This document shows positions 9,065 to 24,980 of a stretch of DNA of 64,000 nucleotides, piece after piece. Below the pieces are notes generated by a model. The model was not told the origin of the DNA, ran no database searches, and saw only the letters and a list, made by a program, of their open reading frames with translations. The position numbers and the translations under genes are program-made. Where the stretch lies: the sequence record LR745206.1, one strand, 5' to 3'. How positions within the stretch are numbered: the first letter of the stretch is position 1; every line of letters starts with the position of its first letter.

Positions 9065-9391
9065 TTATGAGTAATAATTTGTTACTGGTTTCCCAATCTC
9101 ACGAGCATATTCTAACTCACCTTGTACACCTGTTGAATTCTTAACAGCATCTTCATCAAAGTTTACTAGTATTATTTCATCACACCATCTTATAAATTCT
9201 AAATCTATTTTCTTCCACATTTCCCAATTACCATCTAATCCCCCGATTACTGCTATTGGATGTGACATACTAATAGGTGAAAAAACAATATCACCATTTC
9301 TAATTAAATCAGCAGCAACTTCATTTGCTAATTGAAAACTCTTCTCTTCGTATCTAGAATACGGTATTGCTAAATATATTTTTCTATCCAT
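9065..9391 (-). CDS. DUF1937 / nucleoside 2-deoxyribosyltransferase-like protein
   Basis: KIYLAIPYS...VFSPISMSHP...WCDEII...STGVQGELEYA pattern. Confidence 0.7.
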   Translation of the reverse strand: MDRKIYLAIPYSRYEEKSFQLANEVAADLIRNGDIVFSPISMSHPIAVIGGLDGNWEMWKKIDLEFIRWCDEIILVNFDEDAVKNSTGVQGELEYAREIGKPVTNYYS

Positions 9392-9454
9392 ATCTAATAT
9401 ATCTCTGAAATTAAAAAAGTCTAAACTTTTTAATAAAAAACCGTATATTTGTAA

Positions 9455-9883
9455 ATGGGTAAATTATATAGTGTTTGTTTAATTAGTAGAACACAAATGA
9501 GAGATATGAGATTGGATTCAATTTTGAATGATGGTGTATTCAACTCTGATACTTACATACATAATGGTGATTTTACATACATTTTTGAATTGAACAATAC
9601 ACTTAGTTCGGACATAACTAAGAATACACTTGTTTATAAGACACTAGGTGGTGCGTTAAGACTTAAAAACAAATTGAGTGATGATTGGGTTATGAAGTTA
9701 AGATATGCTGTTAGAGGTGATGATGGCTCTTGGATTAGAAACCTTAAAAATGATGATAATCATGAGATTGTTATTATTGATATAACTGAAAAATGGGATT
9801 CCTTGATCGATAGTAGAATCGAAATAAAAAGACAATTATTCGAAAAGGAAGTTAGTAGATTAAAATCAAAGAAGTCCAAATAA
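9455..9883 (+). CDS. hypothetical protein with R-D-x-R-L-x-x-IL motif near N-terminus
   Basis: MRDMRLDSILND; TATATTTG at 9444-9451. Confidence 0.7.
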   Translation: MGKLYSVCLISRTQMRDMRLDSILNDGVFNSDTYIHNGDFTYIFELNNTLSSDITKNTLVYKTLGGALRLKNKLSDDWVMKLRYAVRGDDGSWIRNLKNDDNHEIVIIDITEKWDSLIDSRIEIKRQLFEKEVSRLKSKKSK

Positions 9884-10291
9884 CAAATAACTTATTTGTA
9901 TAATTACACCAACAATCATAAAAATTGTCCTATTCCTGTACGTCATTATCTTTGTTAATTTAGCTGTTGATGTTGTTGATTGTGATCTCCACTTCATCGG
10001 ATAAATTCTATCATCTAATCTATTTCTAGTATGATAATATGTGCCGTTATGGAAGAAGCTAAAAATAAGAGCCATTCCTAATACATTTAGTAAAGCTATC
10101 CATCCAATTTTACAAAATAAAATTAAACCAATCATAATTAATATAATTCCTCGTTGTGATGCGAATATTGGGTGTATCTCATAATCATTCTTTGACTTTG
10201 AGGTATTTTTAAAATGCCAGTAAAACCCTTCTCTGAATCCTTCTAATACCGAATATAGTATCCAAAGTAAATTTGTTATTAATACAATCAT
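9866..10291 (-). CDS. membrane protein
   Basis: Three to four hydrophobic segments. Confidence 0.65.
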   Translation of the reverse strand: MIVLITNLLWILYSVLEGFREGFYWHFKNTSKSKNDYEIHPIFASQRGIILIMIGLILFCKIGWIALLNVLGMALIFSFFHNGTYYHTRNRLDDRIYPMKWRSQSTTSTAKLTKIMTYRNRTIFMIVGVIIQISYLLFGLL

Positions 10292-10293
10292 AA

Positions 10294-11307
10294 TTATTTA
10301 TTTTCTATTTTTACTCTAAAATAAAGTTCATAAATCTCAAAGTTTTTAGTTTCACTTCTTATGAATCCTTTTTTAGTAACAATCTTTTGTGTTTTTATAT
10401 CTTCATACCAATAAAGAATGGTTATTAGATCCCGTACCGTATCTTGTCCTGGTATCTCTTCCCTTATTTTATAACCATTATCCTTTCTTTGTCCACTTAC
10501 TGGTATTAATTTAACATTTTCTGATTTTATCTTATTAAAAAATTTACCAACCCAGATATTAAATATTGACATTAATTGTTCTTTATTATCAGATTTACCA
10601 TGACTGATGGCTTTTTTAATAACCCACTCTGATGGTAGTAATTCACCATCACTCAATTCAGGAAATATATTTATATCAGTGTGTGTCGGTAGGCTTCTGA
10701 GAGCTATTTTTAGTTCATGTAGGTCTCCTCTCCAAGAATTATCAAAATTAATAGAATATCCTTCTATATTTTGACCATCTAAAGATCTGAATCTCTCAGT
10801 ATCATTTCTTGTTGGTTCAATTTGTAAACCCCCAATAATATTAGCTATATCTTCATAATCAATAGGTGATCCATTATCTTCCTTATCAAAAATAACTCTT
10901 ATTTCGACATGATTAACACTTCGTATTGAGTAATAAACATTAGCCTTATCAGAAAGCATCGATTTCACCCTATGTATAGAATTATAAATGGAATCTATTA
11001 TATCTATATCTGATTCAAAATATATACTACCATCCCAATTTCTAACATCACCTTTCCCACCATTAGATATAGATTCCTCTGTTATTTCTCTATCCAATTC
11101 TATTTCTATACCTGGGTAATAGTTTTTAACATCACTTTTTCTTCTATGTGGATAACCAGTTGATGTTGATATATAAACTTGATCTATTAATAAAGTATAT
11201 CCATTATCTACTAAGTCAATAAATATCTCCTCGATATTATTATCATCAATATTTATTCTTGATAATAATTCTTCCTTACTTTCAACTATCTGTGAAAATT
11301 TTCTCAT
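10294..11307 (-). CDS. hypothetical protein, N-terminal tag, F-x-D-L-x-D-x-G paralog family
   Basis: MRKFSQIVES; IEEIFIDLVDNGY; TAATATATA at 11313-11321. Confidence 0.75.
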   Translation of the reverse strand: MRKFSQIVESKEELLSRINIDDNNIEEIFIDLVDNGYTLLIDQVYISTSTGYPHRRKSDVKNYYPGIEIELDREITEESISNGGKGDVRNWDGSIYFESDIDIIDSIYNSIHRVKSMLSDKANVYYSIRSVNHVEIRVIFDKEDNGSPIDYEDIANIIGGLQIEPTRNDTERFRSLDGQNIEGYSINFDNSWRGDLHELKIALRSLPTHTDINIFPELSDGELLPSEWVIKKAISHGKSDNKEQLMSIFNIWVGKFFNKIKSENVKLIPVSGQRKDNGYKIREEIPGQDTVRDLITILYWYEDIKTQKIVTKKGFIRSETKNFEIYELYFRVKIENK

Positions 11308-11369: not shown

Positions 11370-12458
11370 TTAGTTAATTTCCTCTCCGGTTTCTTTGTAT
11401 GCTGGATTGATTATTTTCAATCTTAGTTTCGTACCATCTCTAGCATCTCTATCAATGTATGGTCTAAGTACGACACCCTCACGAATATGTACTTCTTTAC
11501 CAGAAACCAATTCTTTACCTTTACAGAACTCAACCACATCTTTTGGAAGGATGTAGTCGATTCTGGACTTACGGATTCCCCTTTCTTCATCTTCAAAGAT
11601 TACCACTTCTTTTTCATCTAAATAAAGAGTACCATCGTATACCACTGGTACCCAGAGTTCACGGAACTCACTTGGTAATTTGTCGTAAGGCATTGATTCA
11701 CCATCAATCCTAACATCAAAGATTCTGACTGTTGGTTTGTCTTGACCATAGTTATATCCCCCTTGAACAGGAATAACTTCACCAAATACTTGAATCACAC
11801 CACTATTAAAGTTTCTTGTGATTCGACCAACAACATCATCATTTTTAGCCGCAATCCAATATGTATTCGTGTCTGTCTCTTCAATTGCTAATCCAGACTT
11901 TAACATACCTTTTGAAGATACGATTGTTTCACAATTTTCTATCTCGTGAGCGAGAATGAATTGAGAACCGTGTACCTTTTCGGTGATTACAACCCTTTCA
12001 TTCTTAACAAGTTCGTTAACATAAACGTTAGCATGTTCACAGTCATGATTACCAATATGTGGCATGTCAAAGCTTTTCACTTTACCTGCTAATTGTGTTG
12101 GGATAGGCGGTTCGTATTTAGTAATTCCTAATTTATCTGAAACATCTTCACCAATGGTGTATGATTCAAAATCAGGTATTAAATGTTTAGGAATGATAAT
12201 ACCACAAGATATTTCATTTCTAAGACGAACTGACTTTACACGATCTTTATCTTGACCAACAAGGTATTTTTCAAATTCAAGTTTGATATCACCACTAAGA
12301 ATTGACTTCTCTGGGGTGAATATTACCTCGTCTCCTGTCTTATAGAGACCTTTTTGTACTACAACTTGATAAGTTCCCACTTTACCAAGTTCAAGAGTGT
12401 CTGCGTTTTGATGAACGAATAACTCTATTTTTTCCTTTGATACTTTCCAATTACTCAT
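11370..12458 (-). CDS. ATP-dependent RNA ligase, DRB0094/Rnl5 family
   Basis: N-terminal OB-like HQNADTLE...VVVQKG; motif I TEKVHGSQ; FGEV, IFDV, REGVVLRP, LKIINPAY. Confidence 0.85.
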   Translation of the reverse strand: MSNWKVSKEKIELFVHQNADTLELGKVGTYQVVVQKGLYKTGDEVIFTPEKSILSGDIKLEFEKYLVGQDKDRVKSVRLRNEISCGIIIPKHLIPDFESYTIGEDVSDKLGITKYEPPIPTQLAGKVKSFDMPHIGNHDCEHANVYVNELVKNERVVITEKVHGSQFILAHEIENCETIVSSKGMLKSGLAIEETDTNTYWIAAKNDDVVGRITRNFNSGVIQVFGEVIPVQGGYNYGQDKPTVRIFDVRIDGESMPYDKLPSEFRELWVPVVYDGTLYLDEKEVVIFEDEERGIRKSRIDYILPKDVVEFCKGKELVSGKEVHIREGVVLRPYIDRDARDGTKLRLKIINPAYKETGEEIN

Positions 12459-13118: not shown

Positions 13119-13859
13119 TTACTTTTTCATTACTTCCTTCTTGTAGTAATCATCAAAACCATCCATCAAACCAGTTATTGAAGTACTTTTATCTGTTATG
13201 ATAATTTCATCAATAAATCCAAAGTCTAAAGCTTCTTGTGAGTTTAACCAATGGTCTCTTCTAGCACTTTCTAATACCTCATCGAATGTTTTGCCACTAT
13301 TTTCAGCTAACATCTTAAATAAGATATAATTATATTTCTCAGATTCTAAGTGTGAAATACGATTATCTTCAACGTGTCCTTGTGCACCACTTGATACTTG
13401 GTGTATCATTACCTTTGAAAAATTCAAAGAAGATCTTTTACCTTTTGTACCGGATGATAATAAAATAGACCCCATCGATGCTGCCATCCCTGTATTAACA
13501 GTCATTACATCAGATTTGATATATCTCATAACATCAACCATACTTAAACCACTCTTAACTGATCCACCAGGTGAATCAATGTGCATAGTTATATCTCTTA
13601 CATCATTTTGATCAAGATACATCAATTGAGCTTGTACAACTGTTGACATATTATCATTAACAACACCAGCAACCCATAATAATCTATCTCTCATTAAACG
13701 TGAGAAAATATCCATTTGTGTTACCCTCATTTCTCTTTCTTCGAGAATGTATGGTGTCATACTGTTTGTATTTTCTAATTGTTTTTGGTAGTAGTGTAGA
13801 TTCATTGAAGATAATCCTTCACTCATCGCATACTTTTTAAAGTCTTTTCCGTGATCCAT
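13119..13859 (-). CDS. clpP: ATP-dependent Clp protease proteolytic subunit (paralog 1)
   Basis: DIFSRLMRDR, IDSPGGSV, GMAASMG (Ser), MIHQ (His), RRDHWL (Asp). Confidence 0.95.
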   Translation of the reverse strand: MDHGKDFKKYAMSEGLSSMNLHYYQKQLENTNSMTPYILEEREMRVTQMDIFSRLMRDRLLWVAGVVNDNMSTVVQAQLMYLDQNDVRDITMHIDSPGGSVKSGLSMVDVMRYIKSDVMTVNTGMAASMGSILLSSGTKGKRSSLNFSKVMIHQVSSGAQGHVEDNRISHLESEKYNYILFKMLAENSGKTFDEVLESARRDHWLNSQEALDFGFIDEIIITDKSTSITGLMDGFDDYYKKEVMKK

Positions 13860-14353: not shown

Positions 14354-14443
14354 TTTAGATTATATTAAAATACACTATTCATATTAATAATAGTTTAAAA
14401 AGTTTAATTGTTAATTAATTACTTTATGCTTATATTTGTAATT

Positions 14444-14755
14444 ATGAAAAAAAGTTTAATACTTAAAGGTAAGAAAGAAATAGATATTTTATTTGAAACT
14501 GGTATTCCTGTTTCAAGTGAGTTAGTTTTTGCCAAAGTTTTAAATTCCGACTCTACTAAATTTCTTTTTGCTGTTTCATCCAAGAAGTTCAAAAGAGCTG
14601 TTGATAGAAATAGAATAAAAAGATTGATGCGTGAAGTTTCCCGAAAATTGGTAAGTGTTGGTAATATCAAGATTGCTTTCATCTACACAGGAACAACTTT
14701 ACCAACATATTCAGAAATTGAATCCTCAATAAACACAATAGTTAGTAAGTTATGA
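14444..14755 (+). CDS. rnpA: ribonuclease P protein component
   Basis: LKGKKEIDILF, FAVSSKKFKRAVDRNRIKRLMRE (RNR motif); start after TATATTTG at 14431-14438. Confidence 0.9.
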   Translation: MKKSLILKGKKEIDILFETGIPVSSELVFAKVLNSDSTKFLFAVSSKKFKRAVDRNRIKRLMREVSRKLVSVGNIKIAFIYTGTTLPTYSEIESSINTIVSKL

Positions 14756-15128: not shown

Positions 15129-15470
15129 ATGAAATTAGAAAAATTATGGCAATCAGCATCAACGGAAGCTGATTGGTTGCGGTATTATGGACACCGAGAC
15201 ACCAGAATGTCTGAAAAGTTCGAAGATGAAAAATTCTATGATAGAATTATTAGTATTGGATATACTAAAGTAGTAACTCCTATTTGGGAGAGATGTGCTA
15301 TGGGTCATATAAGTTCTGATAAACCTGTTATGGAATCAACAGTAGAAGATTTATTCTTCACATCAGGACCAAGAAATCATTCAAATAATGTTTACACTCC
15401 TTTGGAGTATCTTATCGGGAAAAAAATTGGTACTGAACAATTAGTTAAGATTATTAAAAATTATAGCTAA
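15129..15470 (+). CDS. hypothetical protein
   Basis: Start MKLEK after TATATTTG at 15117-15124. Confidence 0.7.
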   Translation: MKLEKLWQSASTEADWLRYYGHRDTRMSEKFEDEKFYDRIISIGYTKVVTPIWERCAMGHISSDKPVMESTVEDLFFTSGPRNHSNNVYTPLEYLIGKKIGTEQLVKIIKNYS

Positions 15471-17991
15471 TACCCAAACCAATATTCACCCCTATTTTAT
15501 ATTCATTTAGATTGACAGTTTTATCAATCATTCTCTGTGTTGTTTTATAAGTAGGGTTTAGTATATTCTTTACTGATAAATTTATTCCAAATTTATCATT
15601 TATTGTATTTATAACTGTTAAATTCATAGTATTAACTGTATTTTCATAAACATCACCCATTTCTTGTATACCAACACTCCACAATCTAGGACCATATAAG
15701 TTATATGATAGTGTTATAATTGTTTCAGTATTTTTCCAATTCTTAACATAAGAAACATCTAAGTTAAATAATATTGGAGATGCTCCTTGTAAAGGTCTTA
15801 TTGTATTGGTTTGTATAGTACCTGATGTTGTATCTATTTTAGCTACTGATTGTAAAAGTGTTAAGTTAGCACCTAATCTAAAATCACTAGTTGAATCAAT
15901 TTTGAATAGTTTTTTATATTCGAGTTCTAAACCATAGATATAAGCATAATCAGCATTCATAAAACTTTGTAACTGACCAGATGCAGTAGCTAACATTGTT
16001 TTCTCTATTGGGTTTTTAATATACTTACCAAAAACAGTCACACCAATTAAATCAGAAGATTTATTATATCTCTCATATCTTAAATCAGCATTATAGTTAT
16101 CACTATTTCTTAAATTAGGATTTCCTATTGTTTTCATACCAGCAAAAACCTCTGTGTATTCAAATGGAGCAACTTCTCTAAATCCAGGTCTTGATAGTGT
16201 CTTACTAGTTGTAAATCTTAATATATCATTTTTACTCAAATTGAATTTGAAATTAGCGGATGGTAAAATTGAGATACTATCTAATAGATTACCTCTGAGA
16301 TAAATAGGTTGTTGTTGATCTCTATAAGTTATAGATTGTAATGACTTTTCCATTCTAGCACCTATATTAAAAATAAATTTATCAGATTTATATCCAAGTA
16401 AAAGGTATGTAGAGTGTATTTTAACACTAGCATCATACTTAGAGGCTGGGTTAATAATCTTAATAGATTGTGAGTTACTTTCTAAGTTATAATCCGGGTT
16501 ATTAATATCATTCATTAAGTTAGCATTATCAAAATTATAAATTGTTTGTTCATAATCGAAATTCCTAACCTTGTTTTTATAATCATAACCAACATCAAAT
16601 CTAACTTTTTTTAGGGTATAATTTAGATTTAATCTAGTAGCCAATTCTGTTTCATTCAAAGAGGAACTAAATCTATGGTTGTCTAATATATCAATATCAT
16701 TTATTCTATATTCACCCACATCATTATAAAGATACACTAACTGTCTTCTGTTGTCTTCTGTGCTTTTTATTTTGGCATATGAAACTCCCCAATCAACACC
16801 GAAATTATTGAATTTACTTTCACCGGATAATTGATTTATAAAAAGTGATCTTTTAGTTGGTGTATATCTTCTCGTATAAATACTATCTAAATAATCAAAA
16901 TGATAACCATCTGTTTCTCTAAAAGAGTTTGAATTTGATTGTATGAATAAACTATTGAATCTGATATCATGCTCTTTATAACCATAATATAAAGATGCTA
17001 ATCCTGAATAGTCTTGTCTTTGAGTATAGTTTTTATAACCATAATCTATCCTTTCAATACCTTGCGCATTAGCAGTTCTTATCTTACCATATTCATAAGC
17101 AAACTTATTTTTTTGATAAGCGTTTAATAAGAATCCAAATTTATGAGAATTTTTTTTATAATAATTACCAAACAATATATTACTATTGTAATTAATTGGT
17201 GTCTTTTGTATTGGGTTAAAGTTAACATCATCAAAAGATCCAAATTTTCTAAAACTTTGTGAGTTACCTTCTGTTCCTAAGTTAATCTTTAATAAAAATT
17301 CATTTGGATAATCTTTTGTTCTTATATCAAGTGAGCCCCCAGCAAAATCACCATAAGTATTACTACTATAAGACTTTGTGACATTTAAATTTTTAATTAT
17401 CTGTGTAGGAAATATATCCATTGGCATCATTTTACTATCTGGATCAATTGATGGTAATGGAAGTGAATTAAGATATGATGTATTATATCTATCACCCATA
17501 CCTCTTATAAATATGTAATTTGATTGTGTTGATATACCGGTAACTTTAGTTAATCCTTCAGCAACATTTGAACTTCCACTCTTCTGTAATTCTTTTGAAC
17601 CTATATTTTGTGTGACTTCTGTTGTATTTTTTCTATCCATTAGAAGTATATTTTCAGATTCTCTATTCACTTTAAACTCAACAGAAACTTCTCCTAGATT
17701 AAGTGATTGTGACATCATCATATGATTATATGTAGTTTCACCACTAACAACTAAATGTATAGTATCGGTTTTATACGATATAAAACTAAAGATTAAATCA
17801 TATTCACCATTTTCTAATTGTAGTTTATAATTACCATCAAAGTCAGAAGTGGTACCGGTATTGGTACCACTTACTCTGACATTAACTACTGGTAATCCAG
17901 ATGGTTCATCATCTGATGTTATTTTCCCAACTACTTGTGAGTGAGAAAATAGATATGTTATTGATAATAGTAAAGTTATTAAGTATTTCAT
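15454..17991 (-). CDS. TonB-dependent outer-membrane receptor (Bacteroidota type, N-terminal carboxypeptidase-regulatory-like domain)
   Basis: Signal peptide MKYLITLLLS; GTTSDFDGNY domain; plug SNVAEGLTKVTGIS...IRGMGDRYN; barrel TLSRPGFRE, GNPNL, NYNADLRYE, VKNILN; terminal Phe (YNF). Confidence 0.92.
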   Translation of the reverse strand: MKYLITLLLSITYLFSHSQVVGKITSDDEPSGLPVVNVRVSGTNTGTTSDFDGNYKLQLENGEYDLIFSFISYKTDTIHLVVSGETTYNHMMMSQSLNLGEVSVEFKVNRESENILLMDRKNTTEVTQNIGSKELQKSGSSNVAEGLTKVTGISTQSNYIFIRGMGDRYNTSYLNSLPLPSIDPDSKMMPMDIFPTQIIKNLNVTKSYSSNTYGDFAGGSLDIRTKDYPNEFLLKINLGTEGNSQSFRKFGSFDDVNFNPIQKTPINYNSNILFGNYYKKNSHKFGFLLNAYQKNKFAYEYGKIRTANAQGIERIDYGYKNYTQRQDYSGLASLYYGYKEHDIRFNSLFIQSNSNSFRETDGYHFDYLDSIYTRRYTPTKRSLFINQLSGESKFNNFGVDWGVSYAKIKSTEDNRRQLVYLYNDVGEYRINDIDILDNHRFSSSLNETELATRLNLNYTLKKVRFDVGYDYKNKVRNFDYEQTIYNFDNANLMNDINNPDYNLESNSQSIKIINPASKYDASVKIHSTYLLLGYKSDKFIFNIGARMEKSLQSITYRDQQQPIYLRGNLLDSISILPSANFKFNLSKNDILRFTTSKTLSRPGFREVAPFEYTEVFAGMKTIGNPNLRNSDNYNADLRYERYNKSSDLIGVTVFGKYIKNPIEKTMLATASGQLQSFMNADYAYIYGLELEYKKLFKIDSTSDFRLGANLTLLQSVAKIDTTSGTIQTNTIRPLQGASPILFNLDVSYVKNWKNTETIITLSYNLYGPRLWSVGIQEMGDVYENTVNTMNLTVINTINDKFGINLSVKNILNPTYKTTQRMIDKTVNLNEYKIGVNIGLGISYNF

Positions 17992-17998
17992 ATTTTTA

Positions 17999-19294
17999 TT
18001 ATTTTGTCCAATTTTGTAACCAATTTGTTTCAACAGCTCCGATATAATTTGTTGATGTAAACCAAGAGTCTGATGTTGATACATCATACCCACTATAAAC
18101 AACTCCTATCTTACCAATTAGGTTAGGGTTATTTGTACTATTAGTAACATCATTTTCAAATAGTGAACAAGAGTTAAAGTTAACACCATTATTATAAACA
18201 ATTGAGTTTTTCAATACCAATTCACCATTTGTCATATTATCTATTGTGATTGCTTCTGAAACATTTATTCCTTTGTTAGGAAAGTTAACAACAATAGCGT
18301 TGTATATTTTACCCTTTGTACCTTCTCTTAGTCTCATACCTGAGTTAGCATTATCACCATCATTGGCTCCAATTAAAGTTAGATTTGATAGTGTCGGGTT
18401 TGAGAAAGGTGATACTGAGTTATTATCTCCATTATTATCTGCCTCAATTCCTCTATCACCAGATAATCCATCTTGTTCAGCTACCCAGAATTGTCCTTTG
18501 CCTCTCCATCCATGTGTCCAGTCAAAAGAATCATCACCATTCCCGGTTGAAACAGCATATTTGATATTTACTGTTCCACCAAAGAATTCAATTCCATCAT
18601 CAGCTCCTTTATAAGCTTGTATGTATTCAACTGTTGTTCCTGACCCAACACCGTTGAAAGAAAATCCATTTAATTCATTATCAGTACCGAGTATTTTACC
18701 AGCATATTCTACTCTAACATATCTTAATACTCCTGAGTTATCAGAATCATTAGTACCTCCATAAGTTCCTGTACCACCCTCACCTTCGGCAGTAGATCCT
18801 GTGTTTATTTGTGCGTATCCATTTAATATTATACCACCCCAATCACCAGGATTTGGATTTGATTTTATAGTTGTAAAAACAATTGGTGAATTCTGTGTAC
18901 CATTTGCGTTTATTTTACCACCTCTTAATATAGATAAAAATGGTGTAGTTCCATCATCAGCAGCCCATATAGTTGTACCAGATTCGATTGTTAATTCAGC
19001 ACCACTTGATACAAAAACTCCACCTGATAGTAACCATTTAGTGTCACTTGTTAGTGTGTAATTTTCATTAATTGTTCCTTGTATTTGTTTATAAACATCA
19101 CCACCAATAACAACATCAGTTATTGTATAAGGTGCGTATTGACAACTACCATCATCTGTTGTTGCATCTTGGTTATAATTTAGTGATTGTGGATCCGTAC
19201 ATCCATATTTTTCTTTATGACAGGATGTAACTCCAAAAATTATTATTAATCCTAATATCATTGATAAAATTGTTTTCATTTTTCTCATTTTCAT
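17999..19294 (-). CDS. lipoprotein with GCTD...DDGSC repeat and right-handed beta-helix (TBDR partner)
   Basis: Lipobox VTSC; GCTDPQSLNYNQDATTDDGSC; WGGIILNG, LRYVRVEYAG, DDGIEFFGG, GDDSFDWTHG. Confidence 0.8.
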   Translation of the reverse strand: MKMRKMKTILSMILGLIIIFGVTSCHKEKYGCTDPQSLNYNQDATTDDGSCQYAPYTITDVVIGGDVYKQIQGTINENYTLTSDTKWLLSGGVFVSSGAELTIESGTTIWAADDGTTPFLSILRGGKINANGTQNSPIVFTTIKSNPNPGDWGGIILNGYAQINTGSTAEGEGGTGTYGGTNDSDNSGVLRYVRVEYAGKILGTDNELNGFSFNGVGSGTTVEYIQAYKGADDGIEFFGGTVNIKYAVSTGNGDDSFDWTHGWRGKGQFWVAEQDGLSGDRGIEADNNGDNNSVSPFSNPTLSNLTLIGANDGDNANSGMRLREGTKGKIYNAIVVNFPNKGINVSEAITIDNMTNGELVLKNSIVYNNGVNFNSCSLFENDVTNSTNNPNLIGKIGVVYSGYDVSTSDSWFTSTNYIGAVETNWLQNWTK

Positions 19295-19343
19295 TTTTTT
19301 GTTTTATGATTTATATATTCACAAAGGTCTAAAAATATACCTA

Positions 19344-19390
19344 TTTTCATGTCATGAAAATGCTAACAAATTAACTGTATTTGTTAGCAT
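19344..19390. promoter_or_regulatory. two adjacent palindromic operator candidates upstream of the lipoprotein-TBDR operon
   Basis: TTTTCATG-T-CATGAAAA (19344-19360) and ATGCTAACAAAT-7 nt-ATTTGTTAGCAT (19360-19390), both perfect. Confidence 0.5.
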
Positions 19391-19421
19391 ATATTTAACA
19401 TTAAATTTGTATATTTATACA

Positions 19422-20179: not shown

Positions 20180-20400
20180 AGATAGGAGATAGAGTTGTTT
20201 TAAAAGAAAGAGTTGAAATGCACAACATAACATATGAAATTGGTCACCAATTTATAATAGTCGGTTCTGATGATATGCGTGGGTTTGATTTAAGGGATGA
20301 TGATGGTAATATGCTATGTGAAACTAGATTTGTTAAAATGGGATTATTACCTTTATCTGAAATAAGAGATAGAAAAATTGATAAAATATTAAAAAAATGA
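20176..20400 (+). CDS. small SH3-like hypothetical protein, C-terminal tag
   Basis: MKIGDRVVL...; ends IRDRKIDKILKK. Confidence 0.7.
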   Translation: MKIGDRVVLKERVEMHNITYEIGHQFIIVGSDDMRGFDLRDDDGNMLCETRFVKMGLLPLSEIRDRKIDKILKK

Positions 20401-21035
20401 TACCAAGTTTAGAAACTATTATAGAAAGATCTGGAATACACCCAAGTCGTGTGTTTAACGTCTATATCTTTGGATCCCAGGTATATGGGACTGCTAATAA
20501 AGATTCCGACTGGGATATAATTATGGTTGCTAATAACTCAGTGGAATCAACCGAGATAAGGAGAGGATTATTCAATATTCATGTCTATACACCAAATAAA
20601 TTTCAAGCTGATTTGGACTGGCATCGTATAAATAATTTAGAGTGTATTTTCGCACCAGATTGGGCTAAATTAAAAGAAAGTATTAAGTATAATTTTAAAT
20701 TAGATACACCTAAACTTAGACATGCAACATCACATATAAGCTCAAATTCTTGGGTAAAATGTAAAAAGAAATTATTAGTCGCTGATGATTATTACACAGG
20801 AATTAAATCCTTATTTCATTCAATAAGAATACCGATGTTCGCCACACAAATCATGCAACATGGGAAGATAGTTGATTTTTCTTGTGCTAACTGGATTTGG
20901 GACAAAATAACATTCCAAGATAAACCAATTTATATGAGGAATAAATTGAAGTGGACTTGGGATGAATTAGATAAAGAGTTCAGAGAAGTAAGAAACAATA
21001 TACTAACTGATTTCAGATCGGTAACTACAAAATGA
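20397..21035 (+). CDS. DNA polymerase beta-superfamily nucleotidyltransferase
   Basis: YIFGSQVYGTANKDSDWDII (GS..DxD) plus helical C-terminal region. Confidence 0.85.
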   Translation: MIPSLETIIERSGIHPSRVFNVYIFGSQVYGTANKDSDWDIIMVANNSVESTEIRRGLFNIHVYTPNKFQADLDWHRINNLECIFAPDWAKLKESIKYNFKLDTPKLRHATSHISSNSWVKCKKKLLVADDYYTGIKSLFHSIRIPMFATQIMQHGKIVDFSCANWIWDKITFQDKPIYMRNKLKWTWDELDKEFREVRNNILTDFRSVTTK

Positions 21036-22330: not shown

Positions 22331-23992
22331 TTATGCTTTTAATGGTGCATATTTAGTTAATAACTCTTGTTTAATTTTGATGATTCTATCACTAGCTGGA
22401 TAATTGTGATTATCTGGTGTTTTAAGTGATAATGGCATTTTCTTCATCTGGTCTTTAATTCTATCTTTGATAGTAATAAAGTTATCATCTTGTCCTTCAC
22501 CAAATGGTTTGTAAATATTCTCACCATTAAAATACTCAACCATCATATCAACACCATCCTCATTATTAAACACAATAGTTTGTTTTTTATCCAATGCTTC
22601 CTTTGTTCTTAGTAATTTGAATGGTCCTGGTAGTGTACCTTTACCCAAACTCTCACTAAATTTAACAACTGGTTTATCTTCATGTCCAACAGATGATAAC
22701 GCGTATTTAGCAGATAAGTTATCACGTTTTAATTCATTACGTAAACCACCACCTTGTCCAAATAATCCCCAAGTATAGAAGGCGTACCCATGGTCGATTA
22801 GGAAATCAATTTCATCTAAAATATCCTCAAAATTCTTACCATCACCATCAAGAAAATGTAATAATGTACCACATTTCCAAGTACCGGTTCTTGTTGTCAT
22901 TTCTGTATATAATCCAGATTCAACACCGATTTCACAAACTTCCAGAATTTGATCTTTAGTTGTATATCCTTCCTTTGAAGAATCTGGTCTAGCAACAATT
23001 ACTTTGTTACTTCCATCTTCTTTACTTTTTATTGCTAGTGGTAGTAGATAGTTTCTAACTGCAAATTTAGCGTCATAACAATCATCAACCATTGAGATAA
23101 TCTCACCATCTTTGCAACTATCATAAATTGCTTTATAACAATCGAATTCCTTTTCAAATGATTGTACATTTCTATGAGCCAATGCGTTAACTGATGAAAA
23201 TATACCTGGTACTTCACCAGCATTTTTCCAAGCTTGGTAAGCTCCTGAGAATGTATCTGTTCCACCAAATGTATATAAGTGAACCATTCCTAATTCTTCT
23301 GATTCATTTGATGTCATACCAGCTCTGTCTCCAAAATCAGTAATCATAATAGATGCGTAGAAATTTAAGTCGGCTTCTGACATATCAGGATCAACTTTAA
23401 GAATTCTTTCTTTAATTCTGTTTAAGAAGTGTTCGTCTTGAGTAACTCTTTCGGTTCTGGACCAAACTTGTAGAATTTTAGATTCGAACCAAGCTCCTAA
23501 TACACCCATACCATCAACACTTGATGTTATCTCGATAGCTGGTTCATTTGGATATAGAACGGATCCTTCTTTGACAGCTCTAATTTGAATTGGTGGTCTT
23601 CCATTGAATTCATCAACAACTCTTCTCCAAATTTCTTCCGGAAATTCATATTCTTTGAATCCATTTGTTGTTACTTTAGCGTGTGCTAAAAAACGTTTAG
23701 TTTCATCAATTTCATCATGAGTGATTGGTTCGTAGAATAGTTCTTCTAGAATTCTTTGTAACCCAATAAAGACAATTCTATTATCATCTTCTTTGAATAT
23801 TACTGGGTTAATTTTATTTAATTCTCTTCTGAAAGTTACGTAATAAACAGACTTCTCTTTTGCTTCAACACTTTCAAATTTATTAGAACCTATTGTGTAG
23901 GCATCACCCAATAGTAATCTTGGTGTTTTGTATATTTTTCGACCAGGTAAAGTAACCTCTCTATTTTCAACTTTTTCTTGTAAATAATCCAT
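22331..23992 (-). CDS. nadV: nicotinamide phosphoribosyltransferase
   Basis: LLLGDAY, ITDFGDR, FGGTDT, ALAH, VVDC-like MVDDCYD, VARPDS, GDG, GQGGGL, KGTLPG motifs of the NAMPT family. Confidence 0.85.
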   Translation of the reverse strand: MDYLQEKVENREVTLPGRKIYKTPRLLLGDAYTIGSNKFESVEAKEKSVYYVTFRRELNKINPVIFKEDDNRIVFIGLQRILEELFYEPITHDEIDETKRFLAHAKVTTNGFKEYEFPEEIWRRVVDEFNGRPPIQIRAVKEGSVLYPNEPAIEITSSVDGMGVLGAWFESKILQVWSRTERVTQDEHFLNRIKERILKVDPDMSEADLNFYASIMITDFGDRAGMTSNESEELGMVHLYTFGGTDTFSGAYQAWKNAGEVPGIFSSVNALAHRNVQSFEKEFDCYKAIYDSCKDGEIISMVDDCYDAKFAVRNYLLPLAIKSKEDGSNKVIVARPDSSKEGYTTKDQILEVCEIGVESGLYTEMTTRTGTWKCGTLLHFLDGDGKNFEDILDEIDFLIDHGYAFYTWGLFGQGGGLRNELKRDNLSAKYALSSVGHEDKPVVKFSESLGKGTLPGPFKLLRTKEALDKKQTIVFNNEDGVDMMVEYFNGENIYKPFGEGQDDNFITIKDRIKDQMKKMPLSLKTPDNHNYPASDRIIKIKQELLTKYAPLKA

Positions 23993-24002
23993 AATATATT
24001 TT

Positions 24003-24980
24003 TTAATTTAATTCTTTCTCGAAATATTTCATCAGTTTACCAAAGAAATCTAGATGTTCTGATATAATTACCTTAGAATATTTTTCTTCACTTGATAATT
24101 CATCAATAGATACCCATTTAACTTCTTCGATATCATCAGCAGCTTTAGCGTGACCCCACTTTTTCTCAAATAGGAATAGTGTACTGAATATTTCACTATC
24201 TTCTTTAAGATGTCTCCAATCCTTTATTTTACCACTACAAATGTACTTAGCATCTTTTGATTGACCAACTTCAAGACCTCTACCAGTTTCTTCTCCTAGT
24301 TCTCTGATAGCAGCAGATTCATAATCTTTATCAGTTACATCAACATGACCACCAACAAATCTTAATTTATCTTCTCCTGGTTTACGACCTAAAAGTATTG
24401 TATTATTTGATTTATCAAATACAACAACATCTACACAAGGCATTATAACCGGAAATCTACCAAAGTTTGCGTATATAACACCCTTTCTGAAATCTTCTGT
24501 ATGTCCAACTTCTCTAGCTACCTCTTCACGTATTGAGCTACCTGAGATTTTATCTTGATCATTATTACCAACCAACTCTACTGTTTGGTAACGACCATGA
24601 TAAAATGGAACAAACGAATCCCTAGCACCATATAATAGTGTACTTCTATTCCCGAAAGGTTCTGATATTTTACCATCTAAAATGGTTGACCAAGTTTTAT
24701 TATCTCTTTGGTCTCTAAGTGGGAGGATTGTAACGTCCGGATATTCTTGTTGAATCATTGATTTCCTGGTAGCGAAATCTAATGGGTTTCTTTTAGTTTG
24801 TTCCACAACAGGAACTCCTAAAAATATAATAACTTTTTTGTGATTATCACAAACTTTGTCTATCAAATGTCTATGAACATCATGTAGTTTTGGAACTTGC
24901 ATCCTAGCTACAAGAACACCTACTTCATAATCAGAAACATTAATCACAGACGGTATATTTAATTCTATCTTCTCTACCAT
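24003..24980 (-). CDS. nadM: bifunctional NMN adenylyltransferase / Nudix hydrolase (NadM-Nudix, NatV-like)
   Basis: ARMQVPKLHDVH, RNPLDFATRK, ISGSSIRE; C-terminal FVGGHVD...AAIRELGEETG. Confidence 0.88.
   Translation of the reverse strand: MVEKIELNIPSVINVSDYEVGVLVARMQVPKLHDVHRHLIDKVCDNHKKVIIFLGVPVVEQTKRNPLDFATRKSMIQQEYPDVTILPLRDQRDNKTWSTILDGKISEPFGNRSTLLYGARDSFVPFYHGRYQTVELVGNNDQDKISGSSIREEVAREVGHTEDFRKGVIYANFGRFPVIMPCVDVVVFDKSNNTILLGRKPGEDKLRFVGGHVDVTDKDYESAAIRELGEETGRGLEVGQSKDAKYICSGKIKDWRHLKEDSEIFSTLFLFEKKWGHAKAADDIEEVKWVSIDELSSEEKYSKVIISEHLDFFGKLMKYFEKELN

What the first reader, a model, noticed from the sequence alone, without database searches (positions are those of the whole stretch)
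15454..19294. Intact phage-encoded TonB-dependent receptor + surface lipoprotein operon
Seen: a complete 845-aa TBDR (signal peptide, plug, barrel, terminal Phe) directly downstream of a beta-helix lipoprotein with a lipobox, embedded among phage orphan genes and with the same AT-rich composition. Established: Bacteroidota import nutrients through TBDR-lipoprotein pairs, and TBDRs are common phage receptors. Inference: either an auxiliary uptake module (substrate unknown; organophosphate or nucleic-acid scavenging is plausible for a large-genome phage) or outer-membrane remodelling for superinfection exclusion. A full outer-membrane transporter is unusual phage cargo.
Basis: partly seen in the sequence, partly recalled or inferred. 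Interest (0 to 1): 0.75.

Follow-up and report, generated by a model that had tools for sequence, protein, structure and literature searches.

The report
Megaphage phosphate-type outer-membrane importer pair
A giant bacteriophage carries an intact two-gene outer-membrane uptake module, a TonB-dependent transporter plus its surface "lid" lipoprotein, copied from Bacteroidota, where the same pair belongs to the phosphate-starvation response; the transporter in this genome was already published, so the new part is what kind of pair it is.

Summary
Window 15454-19294 (minus strand) holds a 431-aa beta-helix lipoprotein gene, a 7-nt spacer, then an 845-aa TonB-dependent transporter (TBDT) gene.

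The window is 100% identical to LR745206.1, a curated 634,780-bp megaphage. The pair recurs with the same phage neighbours in independent assemblies, and dN/dS is 0.09-0.20, so it is neither a chimera nor decaying cargo.

It is not a SusC/SusD pair. The lipoprotein belongs to Pfam PF28492 (Beta_helix_4). This is the family of Caulobacter ElpS, Flavobacterium johnsoniae FII (Fjoh_0546) and Bacteroides BT4056, which are non-SusD TBDT "lids". In bacteria the pair sits beside phoB/phoR, pstS, OprP-type porin and a Na/Pi-PhoU gene. Published work shows phosphate-starvation induction in Flavobacterium and Caulobacter.

Best reading (about 0.5): a host-derived phosphorus-scavenging auxiliary module that depends on host TonB-ExbBD, since the phage genome has none. 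Superinfection exclusion is not excluded.

Both phage lineages that carry the pair (this clade and marine Mar_Mega_1-like phages) group together on the TBDT tree. A Pho-box-like repeat lies upstream in relatives but is degenerate in this window.

Novelty is modest. The TBDT in this genome was reported in 2021, and outer-membrane proteins in huge phages in 2026.

The parts
19295..19421 (-). Upstream (divergent) intergenic region of the operon. It holds two palindromes (19343-19361, and about 19366-19392), an ACCTTTG element, and a degenerate copy of the GTTAAC-N6-TTAA repeat at 19383-19401.
   Evidence: Sequence and repeat scan. Partly conserved in L001, L002 and L008. The PWM score of the window's copy is only 3.0 bits and is not significant. 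The regulatory role is inferred, not shown.
17999..19294 (-). Lipoprotein gene, 431 aa plus stop. Beta_helix_4 (PF28492) family, that is, an ElpS / FII / BT4056-type putative TBDT lid.
   Evidence: ORF. More than 7,400 homologues; all 120 listed carry precomputed PF28492; the best bacterial hits are 63-66% identical. The protein keeps every invariant family column. AF2 beta-helix model, pLDDT 90.6.
19220..19294 (-). Signal peptide and lipobox of the lipoprotein (residues 1-25; Cys25 is the predicted lipidated residue).
   Evidence: Cys25 is invariant in alignment A1. Residues 1-24 have low pLDDT. Lipidation and surface export are inferred.
19142..19201 (-). Short Cys-bounded N-terminal module (CTDPxxxNY...DDGSC, residues 32-51) between the lipid anchor and the beta-helix.
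   Evidence: Conserved in most of the aligned family members (mostly Flavobacteriales-like) and in the phage copies. Role unknown.
18032..19129 (-). Right-handed parallel beta-helix body of the lipoprotein (residues about 56-421). It carries the family's invariant acidic motifs (DDGxEFFGG, DDSFDW, GDRGIEADNN).
   Evidence: AF2 secondary structure. PDB Foldseek returns only generic beta-helix matches with TM about 0.3. Invariant columns.
17992..17998 (-). 7-nt spacer between the lipoprotein stop (TAA) and the TBDT ATG; no Shine-Dalgarno-like sequence.
   Evidence: Sequence. Co-transcription is inferred.
15454..17991 (-). TonB-dependent transporter gene, 845 aa plus stop.
   Evidence: Pfam and NCBIfam domains. 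Homologues. AF2 model, pLDDT 88. 325 PDB chains matched at E<=1e-3; all 50 listed are TonB-dependent transporters.
17935..17991 (-). TBDT signal peptide (residues 1-19). Predicted cleavage leaves an N-terminal Gln, as in the Bacteroidota 'Q-rule'.
   Evidence: The sequence reads ...LFSHS/QVVGK. The A2 alignment has Gln as the majority residue at that column. The Q-rule is taken from the abstract of PMC5837995 listed. The cleavage site is inferred.
17680..17934 (-). N-terminal extension: carboxypeptidase-D-regulatory-like Ig-fold domain (residues 20-104).
   Evidence: PF13715 1.3e-18 and PF13620 1.2e-8. Strands 18-92 in the model.
17653..17694 (-). TonB-box-like segment (GEVSVEFKVNRESE, residues about 100-113) in the flexible linker before the plug.
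   Evidence: Aligned with xVxVVxKANRESE in bacterial relatives. Residues 97-105 have low pLDDT. TonB binding was not tested.
17317..17655 (-). Plug domain (residues about 113-225).
   Evidence: PF07715 4.2e-11. Model.
15457..17295 (-). Beta-barrel (residues 233-845) ending in ...GISYNF. The phage clade lacks about 68 aligned residues relative to bacterial relatives; about 36 of them come after residue 254, between the first two barrel strands.
   Evidence: AF2 strands. TIGR01782 covers residues 470-845. Deletion map. Assigning the deletions to extracellular loops is inferred from TBDT topology.

Best explanation
The region is a two-gene operon in a 635-kb megaphage of Bacteroidota.

What it encodes: a surface lipoprotein of the Beta_helix_4 (ElpS / FII / BT4056) family, followed by its cognate TonB-dependent transporter.

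Origin: the pair was taken from a Flavobacteriales/Chitinophagales-like host lineage long ago. It has since been recoded to phage composition and kept under purifying selection.

Proposed mechanism during infection:
1. Both proteins are exported by the host Sec system.
2. The lipoprotein is lipidated at Cys25 and displayed on the cell surface.
3. The transporter is inserted by the host BAM machinery.
4. The lipoprotein sits on the transporter's outer face as a substrate-capturing lid.
5. The host's own TonB-ExbBD energises import.

In bacteria this pair belongs to the phosphate-starvation (Pho) response. The most likely role is therefore to raise uptake of a phosphorus-containing compound of unknown identity. 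That would feed replication of a very large genome in a nutrient-poor habitat. The closest analogy is cyanophage pstS/phoA, but acting at the outer membrane.

Shown: gene integrity, folds, family membership, host origin, synteny, selection, and the absence of phage-encoded TonB/ExbBD.
Inferred: expression, localisation, lid-transporter docking, the phosphorus substrate, and the benefit to the phage.
For: Identity and integrity:
- Domains and folds.
- The lipoprotein keeps all invariant family columns.
- The TonB-box-like segment and the C-terminal Phe are kept.

Genuine phage gene:
- The window is 100% identical to the curated complete genome LR745206.1 (PMC9723777 supplement).
- Same pair, same order and same neighbours (RnpA in both; ClpP in L008; NTP-transferase in both; patatin and NUDIX in L001) in independent contigs L001 and L008; L002 adds a partial copy (the pair plus three upstream genes).
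- Nine phage-clade TBDT clusters at 64-96% identity.
- GC3 is 0.15 for both genes.
- dN/dS is 0.12-0.14 for the lid and 0.09-0.20 for the TBDT.

Host origin:
- Best bacterial hits are Flavobacteriales. The same bacterial locus holds both best hits (P0013 and P0139 on one 5.9-Mb contig).
- NJ trees nest the phage copies among Flavobacteriales/Chitinophagales.

Link to the Pho response:
- Of 73 bacterial loci with a called lid gene, 61 have the TBDT within 4 genes and 30 have a Pho-type neighbour.
- Alteromonas neighbours pass the PhoB and PhoR equivalog cut-offs and include a PstS-type binding protein (PBP_like_2).
- Bacteroidota regulators have PhoB/PhoR as their best family, though below cut-off.
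- An OprP-type porin and a Na/Pi-PhoU gene lie next to the pair.
- A Flavobacterium locus reproduces the published Fjoh_0541/0543-0546 Pfam series.
- Literature: Fjoh_0545 and Fjoh_0546 are induced by Pi depletion only (PMC8115612). ElpS is made only under Pi starvation and is followed by the TBDT cc0171 (PMC2996285). BT4055/BT4056 are proposed as a TBDT-lid pair conserved in 621 genera (bioRxiv 10.1101/2023.03.17.533168).

Dependence on the host: a profile search of the whole phage record finds one lid and one TBDT. It finds no ExbB, ExbD, TonB, PstS, PhoB/R, porin or Na/Pi homologue.

Regulation hint: a GTTAAC-N6-TTAA repeat learned only from 16 bacterial phoB-TBDT spacers is the top hit of the whole L008 locus, 123 nt upstream of the phage lid gene. 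It also recurs at -78 to -89 in the marine clade.
Against: - The substrate of the bacterial family is unknown. No phenotype was found for BT4055/BT4056, and cc0171 is reported as constitutive.
- Only 30 of 73 bacterial loci show a Pho-type neighbour.
- Bacteroidota regulators score below the PhoB/PhoR cut-offs.
- No Pho gene lies near the pair in any phage locus, or anywhere in LR745206 among the families tested.
- The Pho-box-like site is degenerate in this window: 3.0 bits, and 38 of 90 control upstream regions do as well.
- The identity of family members with Fjoh_0546 rests on position and fold, not on a direct sequence comparison.
- There is no expression or localisation evidence for the phage genes.
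- The trees are simple NJ trees. The all-phage clade has 60/60 support for the TBDT but only 41/100 for the lid, and long-branch attraction is possible.
Confidence: 0.5

Rival explanations
1. Outer-membrane remodelling for superinfection exclusion. The phage-made transporter and lid would change the receptor landscape of the infected cell, by masking, replacing or crowding out host receptors. Other phages would then adsorb poorly. Nutrient transport would be irrelevant.
For: - TBDTs are common phage receptors (established knowledge).
- The 2026 huge-phage preprint proposes this role for phage outer-membrane proteins and cites lambda Lom blocking LamB.
- Phage-clade TBDTs are shorter than bacterial ones. 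Most of the missing residues fall between barrel strands in what should be extracellular loops.
- The Pho-box-like site is decayed in this window, which fits control by the phage programme rather than by nutrient status.
Against: - A decoy or mask needs neither a conserved TonB-box-like segment, nor a plug, nor a lid that keeps every invariant family residue. All of these are kept under purifying selection across deep phage divergence.
- The phage TBDT is not unusually diverged relative to its lid (-0.6 SD from the bacterial trend).
- Known exclusion proteins named in the literature read here are small, not full transporters.
Confidence: 0.15
2. An uptake module for a nutrient other than phosphorus, such as a metal chelate, a cofactor or an amino compound. 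On this view the Pho linkage seen in part of the bacterial family does not apply to the phage copy.
For: - The family's substrate is unknown.
- 43 of 73 bacterial loci show no Pho-type neighbour.
- Some loci sit by ECF-sigma/FecR or Fe-S genes.
- The closest solved folds are siderophore, haem and B12 transporters.
- No phage locus places the pair beside Pho genes.
Against: - The closest bacterial relatives of the phage pair (L003, L004, L009 and the Crocinitomicaceae loci) are the ones with PhoB-like regulators, OprP-type porins and Na/Pi-PhoU next door.
- The only experimental data for the family are phosphate-specific: induction was not seen under Fe depletion (nor N depletion in Flavobacterium; ammonium addition had no effect on ElpS).
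- A Pho-box-like repeat lies upstream in phage relatives.
- The fold matches to siderophore transporters are generic TBDT similarity at 10-15% identity.
Confidence: 0.2
3. A SusC-type carbohydrate importer that increases sugar uptake during infection, as suggested when the gene was first annotated in Mar_Mega_1 and LR745206.
For: - Automatic annotation named the Mar_Mega_1 homologue 'TonB-dependent receptor SusC' (PMC9723777).
- The protein shares SusC's N-terminal carboxypeptidase-regulatory-like domain.
- The lid has a pectin-lyase-like beta-helix fold, as many carbohydrate-active enzymes do.
Against: - The SusC/RagA model TIGR04056 matches only residues 20-158, with 52.9 bits against a cut-off of 368.
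- The partner is not a SusD protein.
- No carbohydrate-active enzyme genes recur among the neighbour clusters of the bacterial loci surveyed.
- The beta-helix matches are generic (TM about 0.3, 8-14% identity).
Confidence: 0.05
4. Assembly chimera or bacterial contamination: the two genes are host DNA wrongly joined to a phage contig.
For: - Both genes have close bacterial homologues.
- Some short 'Bacteriophage sp.' records that carry the pair (MT837092.1, MT838075.1) look like bacterial fragments.
Against: - The same junctions with the same phage neighbours occur in independent assemblies from different samples and pipelines.
- LR745206 is a curated circular genome.
- Gene order is reversed relative to Bacteroidota.
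- GC3 is 0.15, against host loci at 34-45% overall GC.
- Identity to the nearest bacteria is only 39-66%.
Confidence: 0.01

Closest known systems
Flavobacterium johnsoniae 'PhoBR operon / PUSIV': TBDT Fjoh_0545 plus lipoprotein FII Fjoh_0546 (Lidbury et al. 2020, PMC8115612)
   Same: - A TBDT with CarbopepD_reg and Plug domains, adjacent to a pectin-lyase-fold lipoprotein.
- Both belong to the Bacteroidota lineage that donated the phage genes.
   Different: - Gene order is TBDT then lipoprotein in Bacteroidota, and lipoprotein then TBDT in the phage.
- The phage has no phoBR, OprP or glycosyltransferase next door.
- The phage TBDT is about 70-100 aa shorter.
- The Flavobacterium sp. family member (L060) is about 41% identical to the window lid.
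- No direct sequence comparison with Fjoh_0546 itself could be made.
Caulobacter crescentus ElpS (CC0170) plus TBDT CC0171 (Le Blastier et al. 2010, PMC2996285)
   Same: - Same gene order as the phage: lipoprotein, then TBDT.
- A surface lipoprotein made under phosphate starvation.
- Alphaproteobacterial loci in this survey (Kordiimonas, Eilatimonas, IMCC14465) have Beta_helix_4, TBDT, then GspC/D/E, as described for elpS.
   Different: - A distant relative: alphaproteobacterial members are 37-38% identical to the window lid.
- ElpS is released by T2SS-dependent proteolysis, and the phage has no T2SS context.
- cc0171 is reported as constitutive.
Bacteroides thetaiotaomicron BT4055/BT4056, one of six non-SusD 'lid' families (Price, Deutschbauer & Arkin 2023, bioRxiv 10.1101/2023.03.17.533168)
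   Same: - A non-SusC TBDT with an adjacent co-oriented pectin-lyase-superfamily lipoprotein.
- Proximity conserved in 621 genera, including outside Bacteroidota.
- This matches the breadth seen here.
   Different: - The lid role there rests on AlphaFold-Multimer with few confident contacts, and no fitness phenotype was found.
- That is a chromosomal pair in gut bacteria, not a phage copy.
Mar_Mega_1 marine megaphage 'TonB-dependent receptor SusC' (SLAVMIC_00007 / UniProt A0A8D9FQQ5; Michniewski et al. 2021, PMC9723777)
   Same: - A phage-encoded full-length TBDT of the same family: 33% identity, TM 0.82/0.86.
- The paper already lists LR745206 as sharing it.
- IMG/VR phage loci with similarly short TBDTs (814-821 aa) also carry the lid upstream.
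   Different: - That paper interpreted it as a SusC carbohydrate importer and did not report the partner lipoprotein or the Pho link.
- The two phage lineages share only about 35% TBDT identity.
Cyanophage Pho-regulon auxiliary genes pstS and phoA (established knowledge, not tested here)
   Same: Host-derived phosphorus-acquisition genes carried by phages and thought to relieve P limitation during infection. In cyanophages they respond to the host's PhoBR.
   Different: Those are a periplasmic binding protein and a phosphatase. This is an outer-membrane transporter with a surface lid, in phages of Bacteroidota. Phosphate dependence is not shown here.
Huge-phage outer-membrane beta-barrel proteins, including the 22-stranded TBDT of Lak phages (bioRxiv 10.64898/2026.10.24.761521)
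   Same: Large-genome phages of Bacteroidota that encode complete TBDTs, some of them transcribed in metatranscriptomes. Phage copies are closest to host homologues.
   Different: That survey does not describe the beta-helix lid family or the ElpS/FII relationship, and it favours receptor interference as the role.
SusC/SusD (archetypal Bacteroidota TBDT-lipoprotein pair)
   Same: A TBDT with an N-terminal carboxypeptidase-regulatory-like domain, working with a surface lipoprotein encoded next to it.
   Different: The pair fails the SusC model (52.9 bits against 368). The partner is a beta-helix, not a SusD fold. The barrel is shorter. The gene order is reversed.

Membership tests
TonB-dependent transporter | Plug domain (PF07715) | tested here: met
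   PF07715 at 4.2e-11, 43.7 bits against a cut-off of 23.9, residues 121-219.
TonB-dependent transporter | Large C-terminal beta-barrel enclosing the plug | tested here: met
   AF2 model with pLDDT 88. 325 PDB chains matched at E<=1e-3, all 50 listed being TonB-dependent transporters; the top hit is PhuR at 2e-29, with target-normalised TM 0.53-0.75. The exact strand number (22) was not counted from coordinates.
TonB-dependent transporter | TonB box before the plug | tested here: inconclusive
   The strand-like segment GEVSVEFKVNRESE lies in a low-confidence linker and aligns with xVxVVxKANRESE of bacterial relatives. Binding to TonB is not testable here.
TonB-dependent transporter | Signal peptide and C-terminal aromatic beta-signal | tested here: met
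   N-terminal hydrophobic helix (residues 2-14) and a C-terminus of ...GISYNF.
TonB-dependent transporter | Energised by a TonB-ExbB-ExbD complex | not testable with these tools
   No ExbB, ExbD or TonB homologue was found in the whole phage record at E<=1e-3. Any energising would have to come from the host.
SusC/RagA-SusD pair | TBDT matches the SusC/RagA model TIGR04056 over its full length | tested here: not met
   Only residues 20-158 match, with 52.9 bits against a cut-off of 368.25.
SusC/RagA-SusD pair | Adjacent SusD-family lipoprotein | tested here: not met
   The partner has no SusD Pfam hit and folds as a beta-helix.
ElpS / FII / BT4056-type lid (Pfam PF28492 Beta_helix_4) with cognate TBDT | Sequence membership in PF28492 | tested here: met
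   The model is absent from the local Pfam copy (0 hits). However, all 120 listed homologues carry precomputed PF28492, at E-values from 1.5e-260 down to 1.9e-142. The window protein keeps all invariant columns.
ElpS / FII / BT4056-type lid (Pfam PF28492 Beta_helix_4) with cognate TBDT | Lipoprotein signal with conserved Cys | tested here: met
   Cys25 is an invariant column and is preceded by a hydrophobic signal.
ElpS / FII / BT4056-type lid (Pfam PF28492 Beta_helix_4) with cognate TBDT | Pectin-lyase-like right-handed beta-helix fold | tested here: met
   AF2 model with pLDDT 90.6. Foldseek hits are AlgG, P22 tailspike, PL6 and GH87, all generic.
ElpS / FII / BT4056-type lid (Pfam PF28492 Beta_helix_4) with cognate TBDT | Encoded next to, and co-oriented with, a non-SusC TBDT | tested here: met
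   A 7-nt spacer in the window. The TBDT lies within 4 genes in 61 of 73 bacterial loci.
ElpS / FII / BT4056-type lid (Pfam PF28492 Beta_helix_4) with cognate TBDT | Same family as the named proteins Fjoh_0546, BT4056 and ElpS | tested here: inconclusive
   Positional equivalence in Flavobacterium and an elpS-like layout in Alphaproteobacteria. The family has members in Bacteroides and Flavobacterium. The named sequences themselves could not be fetched for direct comparison.
ElpS / FII / BT4056-type lid (Pfam PF28492 Beta_helix_4) with cognate TBDT | Surface exposure and docking on the TBDT outer face | not testable with these tools
   No multimer prediction was available. The residues after Cys25 (HKEK) are not an obvious acidic Bacteroides-type export signal (own knowledge).
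Pho-regulon auxiliary metabolic gene of a phage | Host-derived gene in a genuine phage genome, kept by selection | tested here: met
Pho-regulon auxiliary metabolic gene of a phage | Bacterial orthologues belong to the Pho regulon | tested here: inconclusive
   30 of 73 loci have Pho-type neighbours. PhoB and PhoR pass cut-offs in Alteromonas, and are the best hit but below cut-off in Bacteroidota. Induction is shown in the literature for F. johnsoniae and Caulobacter only.
Pho-regulon auxiliary metabolic gene of a phage | Pho-box-type operator upstream of the phage gene | tested here: inconclusive
   The bacterial-trained GTTAAC-N6-TTAA PWM is strong in L008 (16.0 bits, rank 1 of 30,880) and moderate in the marine clade. 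It is not significant in the window (3.0 bits; 38 of 90 controls reach it). That the motif binds PhoB is itself inferred.
Pho-regulon auxiliary metabolic gene of a phage | Expressed during infection and raises P uptake | not testable with these tools

The most novel reading that the evidence does not exclude
An outer-membrane phosphorus importer (a TBDT plus an ElpS-type lid) may be an anciently inherited module of megaphages that infect Flavobacteriales-like Bacteroidota. It would be shared by the subsurface/freshwater LR745206 clade and the marine Mar_Mega_1-like clade. It would originally have been wired to the host's PhoB through a GTTAAC-N6-TTAA Pho box. On this reading the phage reads the host's phosphate status and installs its own uptake machinery at the cell surface. 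In the LR745206 sub-lineage that operator has decayed, which hints at a switch to control by the phage's own programme.
Probability: 0.3. Interest if true: 0.65.

Novelty: new member of a known kind. Interest (0 to 1): 0.45.

Why it matters
If the phosphorus reading holds, phage manipulation of host phosphate acquisition extends in three ways. It moves from the periplasm and inner membrane (cyanophage pstS/phoA) to the outer membrane. It moves from cyanobacteria to Bacteroidota. And it reaches megaphages in deep-subsurface and marine waters.

The finding also corrects a published label. "SusC, carbohydrate uptake" becomes a Pho-type TBDT with a non-SusD lid.

It gives the poorly understood ElpS/FII/BT4056 family an independent sign of importance: a virus has kept the lid and its transporter together over deep divergence.

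The candidate Bacteroidota Pho box is a by-product that could be checked against existing transcriptomes.

Tried and rejected
- **PDB search with the lid profile.** Only noise came back (E about 0.7).
- **PDB search with the TBDT sequence.** No hit at 1e-3.
- **PDB fold search with the lid model.** Only generic beta-helices (TM about 0.3), so no function follows from the fold.
- **Idea that the phage TBDT evolves abnormally fast relative to its lid (40% against 64% identity to bacteria).** Rejected. Bacterial pairs show the same asymmetry (TBDT identity = 0.80 x lid identity - 0.02), and the window clade lies only 0.6 SD below that trend.
- **Search for phage-encoded TonB/ExbBD, PstS, PhoBR, porin and Na/Pi genes across all of LR745206.** Nothing found. 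PhoH and phosphatases were not tested because no profile was available.
- **Search for Pho genes beside the pair in 53 viral loci.** None found.
- **Attempt to reach F. johnsoniae Fjoh_0546 by a homologue search from a Flavobacterium member.** It was not in the top 120, so positional evidence was used instead.
- **Sigma-70 promoter and terminator scan.** No more sites than in shuffles, so uninformative for a Bacteroidota-type host.
- **Pho-box-like PWM on the window itself.** Not significant.
- **tRNA and Rfam scans of the window.** Nothing found.
- **Coordinate errors of my own.** The PHROGs scan was repeated with the correct coordinates; the rnpA dN/dS comparison was dropped.

Full report
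**1. Observation**

The stretch 15454-19294 holds two minus-strand ORFs.

The upstream ORF (17999-19294, 431 aa) starts with a hydrophobic signal that ends in ...GVTSC. Cys25 is an invariant column in an alignment of 40 family members. An AlphaFold2 model built on that alignment is a confident right-handed parallel beta-helix (pLDDT 90.6, pTM 0.85; residues 1-24 are disordered).

The downstream ORF is listed mechanically from a TTG at 18102. The biological start is the ATG at 17991, for three reasons:
- It lies 7 nt after the lipoprotein's TAA.
- It matches the 843-859 aa of the phage relatives.

This protein has the following features:
- CarbopepD_reg_2 and Plug domains.
- A barrel-region match to TIGR01782 (7.5e-50, below cut-off).
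- A confident model (pLDDT 88).
- 325 PDB matches at E<=1e-3; all 50 listed are TonB-dependent transporters.
- A C-terminus of ...GISYNF.

**2. Is it really phage DNA?**

The window is 100% identical to LR745206.1, an unannotated 634,780-bp 'uncultured phage' record. A paper's supplement lists this record as a complete, circularised, curated genome from the Horonobe deep subsurface.

The window also carries phage-type genes: a UvsW-like helicase, a baseplate OB-domain protein, an RNA ligase, NAMPT plus NUDIX, and many orphan ORFs.

The pair is not an assembly accident:
- Independent contigs from other samples and pipelines carry the same two genes, in the same order, with the same neighbours. 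These are L001 (76 kb, ENA) and L008 (Logan); L002 (3.9 kb, Logan) adds a partial copy, with the lid, the truncated start of the TBDT and three upstream genes.
- 16 of 17 ORFs of L001 match the window, the eight non-pair hits printed at 91-96% identity, and 13 of 18 ORFs of L008 match it, at 40-80%.
- Nine 90%-identity clusters of phage-clade TBDTs exist, at 64-96% identity.
- GC3 of both genes is 0.15, against host loci of 34-45% overall GC.
- Pairwise dN/dS among the three phage copies is 0.12-0.14 for the lipoprotein and 0.09-0.20 for the transporter.

Both genes are maintained by selection inside the phage lineage.

**3. What kind of pair is it?**

It is not SusC/SusD. The SusC/RagA model matches only the N-terminal extension (52.9 bits against a cut-off of 368). 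The partner has no SusD signature.

The lipoprotein has more than 7,400 homologues. All 120 listed are precomputed members of Pfam PF28492, 'Beta_helix_4'. That model is newer than the local Pfam copy, which explains the empty local scan.

The best bacterial relatives are Flavobacteriales (Crocinitomix, Putridiphycobacter) at 63-66% identity. The best bacterial TBDTs are 39-41% identical and about 70-100 aa longer. The two best hits come from one and the same bacterial locus.

A scan of one genome per species found at least 580 loci. They span Bacteroidota, Gemmatimonadota, Acidobacteriota, Bdellovibrionota, and Alpha- and Gammaproteobacteria.

I clustered all neighbouring ORFs without prior labels and annotated the recurrent clusters. 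Of 73 bacterial loci with a called lid gene, 61 have the TBDT within four genes and 30 have a Pho-type neighbour. Three layouts recur:
- **Bacteroidota:** PhoR<, PhoB<, TBDT>, lid>. An OprP-type porin and a Na/Pi-cotransporter-PhoU gene lie next door in the closest relatives of the phage copy.
- **Alteromonas and Salinimonas:** phoB, phoR, pstS, (one gene), lid, TBDT, DUF3450, TtpC-like ExbB, ExbB, ExbD, TonB. The regulators pass the curated PhoB and PhoR cut-offs.
- **Kordiimonas, Eilatimonas and IMCC14465:** lid, TBDT, GspC, GspD, GspE.

**4. Comparison with the literature**

These layouts match published systems.

- **Flavobacterium johnsoniae.** The 'PhoBR operon/PUSIV' comprises the following genes (PMC8115612):
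  - Fjoh_0541, a glycosyltransferase (pf04101)
  - Fjoh_0542, OprP
  - Fjoh_0543, PhoR
  - Fjoh_0544, PhoB
  - Fjoh_0545, a TBDT
  - Fjoh_0546, lipoprotein 'FII' with a pectin-lyase fold

  The TBDT and FII are induced strongly by Pi depletion only, and FII is enriched in the Pi-deplete exoproteome. A Flavobacterium locus fetched here reproduces the Pfam series PF04101, PhoR, PhoB, TBDT, Beta_helix_4.
- **Caulobacter.** ElpS is a surface lipoprotein made only under phosphate starvation. Its gene is followed by the TBDT cc0171 and adjoins the gsp genes (PMC2996285). The alphaproteobacterial loci show this layout.
- **Bacteroides.** Price et al. list BT4055/BT4056 as one of six non-SusD 'lid' families. 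BT4056 is 40% identical to Fjoh_0546 and distantly related to ElpS. Proximity of the pair is conserved in 621 genera. The substrate is unknown.

I could not fetch the named proteins for a direct comparison, and F. johnsoniae did not appear in the top 120 hits of a dedicated search. The equivalence therefore rests on position, fold and family breadth.

**5. History in phages**

IMG/VR holds ten further loci with lid-then-TBDT order (L089-L098).
- The lids are 54-61% identical to the window protein.
- The TBDTs are 814-821 aa (one locus, L089, has a 732-aa ORF) and 35-37% identical.
- GC is 29-35%.
- One locus has a tail sheath gene nearby.

BFVD contains exactly one full-length viral TBDT, the Mar_Mega_1 marine megaphage protein. 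It is a homologue at 33% identity with TM 0.82/0.86.

In NJ trees, all phage TBDTs form one clade in 60 of 60 bootstraps. That clade is nested among Flavobacteriales/Chitinophagales. The lid tree agrees in topology, but the union of the two phage clades has only 41% support.

A single old acquisition is therefore likely but not proven, and long-branch attraction is a caveat.

All phage copies have the order lid-then-TBDT. Their Bacteroidota relatives have the opposite order.

The phage-clade TBDTs lack about 68 aligned residues. About 36 of these come after residue 254, between the first two barrel strands, which is presumably an extracellular loop.

The stronger divergence of the TBDT relative to the lid is a property of the family, not of the phage.

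**6. Dependence on the host, and regulation**

I read the whole phage record in 13 separate pieces and searched them with profiles built from the bacterial neighbour clusters. The search found one lid and one TBDT. It found no ExbB, ExbD, TonB, DUF3450, PstS, PhoB, PhoR, OprP or Na/Pi-PhoU homologue. Export, lipidation, barrel insertion and energising must therefore be done by the host.

The TBDT's predicted signal cleavage leaves an N-terminal Gln, as is usual in Bacteroidota.

A Gibbs sampler run only on 16 Bacteroidota phoB-TBDT spacers found GTTAAC-N6-TTAA. The TTAA cores lie 11 bp apart, which is the direct-repeat geometry of OmpR/PhoB-type operators. Results with that matrix:
- **L008:** the best hit of the entire locus (16.0 bits, rank 1 of 30,880) lies 123 nt upstream of the phage lid gene. 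None of 17 control upstream regions reaches that score.
- **Marine clade:** hits at -78 to -89, ranked 4-22 of between about 24,000 and 42,000 positions, depending on the locus.
- **L001:** a weak hit at the homologous place.
- **The window:** 3.0 bits, which 38 of 90 control upstream regions equal or beat.

The operator-like element is thus a feature of the phage lineage but is decayed in this genome. That it binds PhoB is an inference.

**7. Interpretation**

The most likely reading is a host-derived outer-membrane uptake module for a phosphorus compound (confidence about 0.5).

The identity statement has much higher confidence, about 0.9. That statement is: a TBDT plus an ElpS/FII-type lid, from Flavobacteriales-like hosts, selected in phages.

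Rivals:
- Uptake of another nutrient (0.2).
- Receptor-landscape remodelling or superinfection exclusion (0.15).
- SusC-type sugar uptake (0.05).
- Assembly chimera (0.01).

**8. Novelty**

- The TBDT in LR745206 was already listed in 2021, though as 'SusC' and for carbohydrate uptake.
- A 2026 preprint reports 1,603 outer-membrane beta-barrels in huge phages, including transcribed TBDTs.
- No PHROG family matches either protein.

New here:
- The partner lid and its family.
- The Pho-regulon context.
- The reversed gene order.
- The shared ancestry with the marine megaphage copies.
- The absence of a phage TonB system.
- The operator-like repeat.

I rate it a new member of a known kind, with interest 0.45.

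Noticed in passing
window 14408-14755 (+); also L001 14521-14850 (-) and L008 13829-14125 (-): The phage encodes an RNase P protein component (RnpA). It matches PF00825 at 6.3e-13 and TIGR00188 at 43.8 bits, above that model's cut-off of 38.35. The gene is conserved next to the pair in related phage contigs. It has no PHROG family. This is unusual cargo and may relate to tRNA processing in a megaphage.
   Followed up: partly
window 13119-13859 (-): A ClpP-like protease. Its best NCBIfam matches are cellular ClpP models, all below cut-off. It also matches PHROG head-maturation proteases (phrog_94, 5.3e-37). Whether it is a prohead protease or a true ClpP is open.
   Followed up: partly
window 22331-23992 (-), 24003-24980 (-), 25064-26059 (+), 11370-12458 (-), 20397-21035 (+): A cluster of host-like metabolic and RNA genes: an NAMPT-like protein, a NUDIX protein (together suggesting NAD salvage), a patatin-like phospholipase (already noted for this genome in PMC9723777), an RNA ligase and a nucleotidyltransferase.
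   Followed up: partly
IMG/VR loci L109-L136 (e.g. L110 10001-11053, L123 10001-11194): A second group of large phage contigs carries a Beta_helix_4-like protein (32-34% identity) without any TBDT. It sits in a conserved module beside D12 N6-adenine and C5-cytosine DNA methyltransferases. It could be a lid that lost its transporter or a beta-helix protein with another role.
   Followed up: partly
MT837092.1 and MT838075.1 (phages collection; hits H3, H4, H9, H10): Two short 'Bacteriophage sp.' records from human faeces (7.7 and 5.7 kb) carry the pair in the bacterial order, TBDT then lid. They are probably bacterial fragments filed as phage.
   Followed up: partly
L003, L004, L009-L012, L014, L025-L027, L036, L056, L060, L077, L078, L152 (phoB-TBDT intergenic regions): A conserved GTTAAC-N6-TTAA direct repeat lies in the phoB-TBDT intergenic regions; a CCTTTGC element close to the TBDT start is visible in most of them. 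The repeat is a candidate Pho box for Bacteroidota, where the operator is not defined to my knowledge.
   Followed up: partly
L076, L082, L084, L087, L088, L049, L068, L081: In Gammaproteobacteria and Bdellovibrionota the lid-TBDT pair is embedded in a TonB2-type cluster: DUF3450, a long TtpC-like ExbB, ExbB, ExbD, TonB and a roughly 440-aa protein. In Alteromonas and Salinimonas, phoB-phoR-pstS lies just upstream.
   Followed up: partly
L018 and L019 (Aquimarina): Tandem duplication of the whole pair (TBDT, lid, TBDT, lid). The second copies are strongly diverged.
   Followed up: no
window 19343-19361 and about 19366-19392: Two palindromes lie in the divergent intergenic region upstream of the operon: ATTTTCATG/CATGAAAAT, and GCTAACAAAT...ATTTGTTAGC. 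The second is kept, with changes, in L001 and L002. Whether they are operators or a terminator for the neighbouring gene is unknown.
   Followed up: partly
IMG/VR loci L099 and L100 (ExbB-like ORF at 9308-9880, lid-like gene at 10001-11167): Two IMG/VR contigs (127 kb and 68 kb) have an ExbB homologue (9.1e-41) directly upstream of a distant Beta_helix_4 gene (36% identity). No clustered TBDT was found. Whether these contigs are viral was not checked.
   Followed up: no
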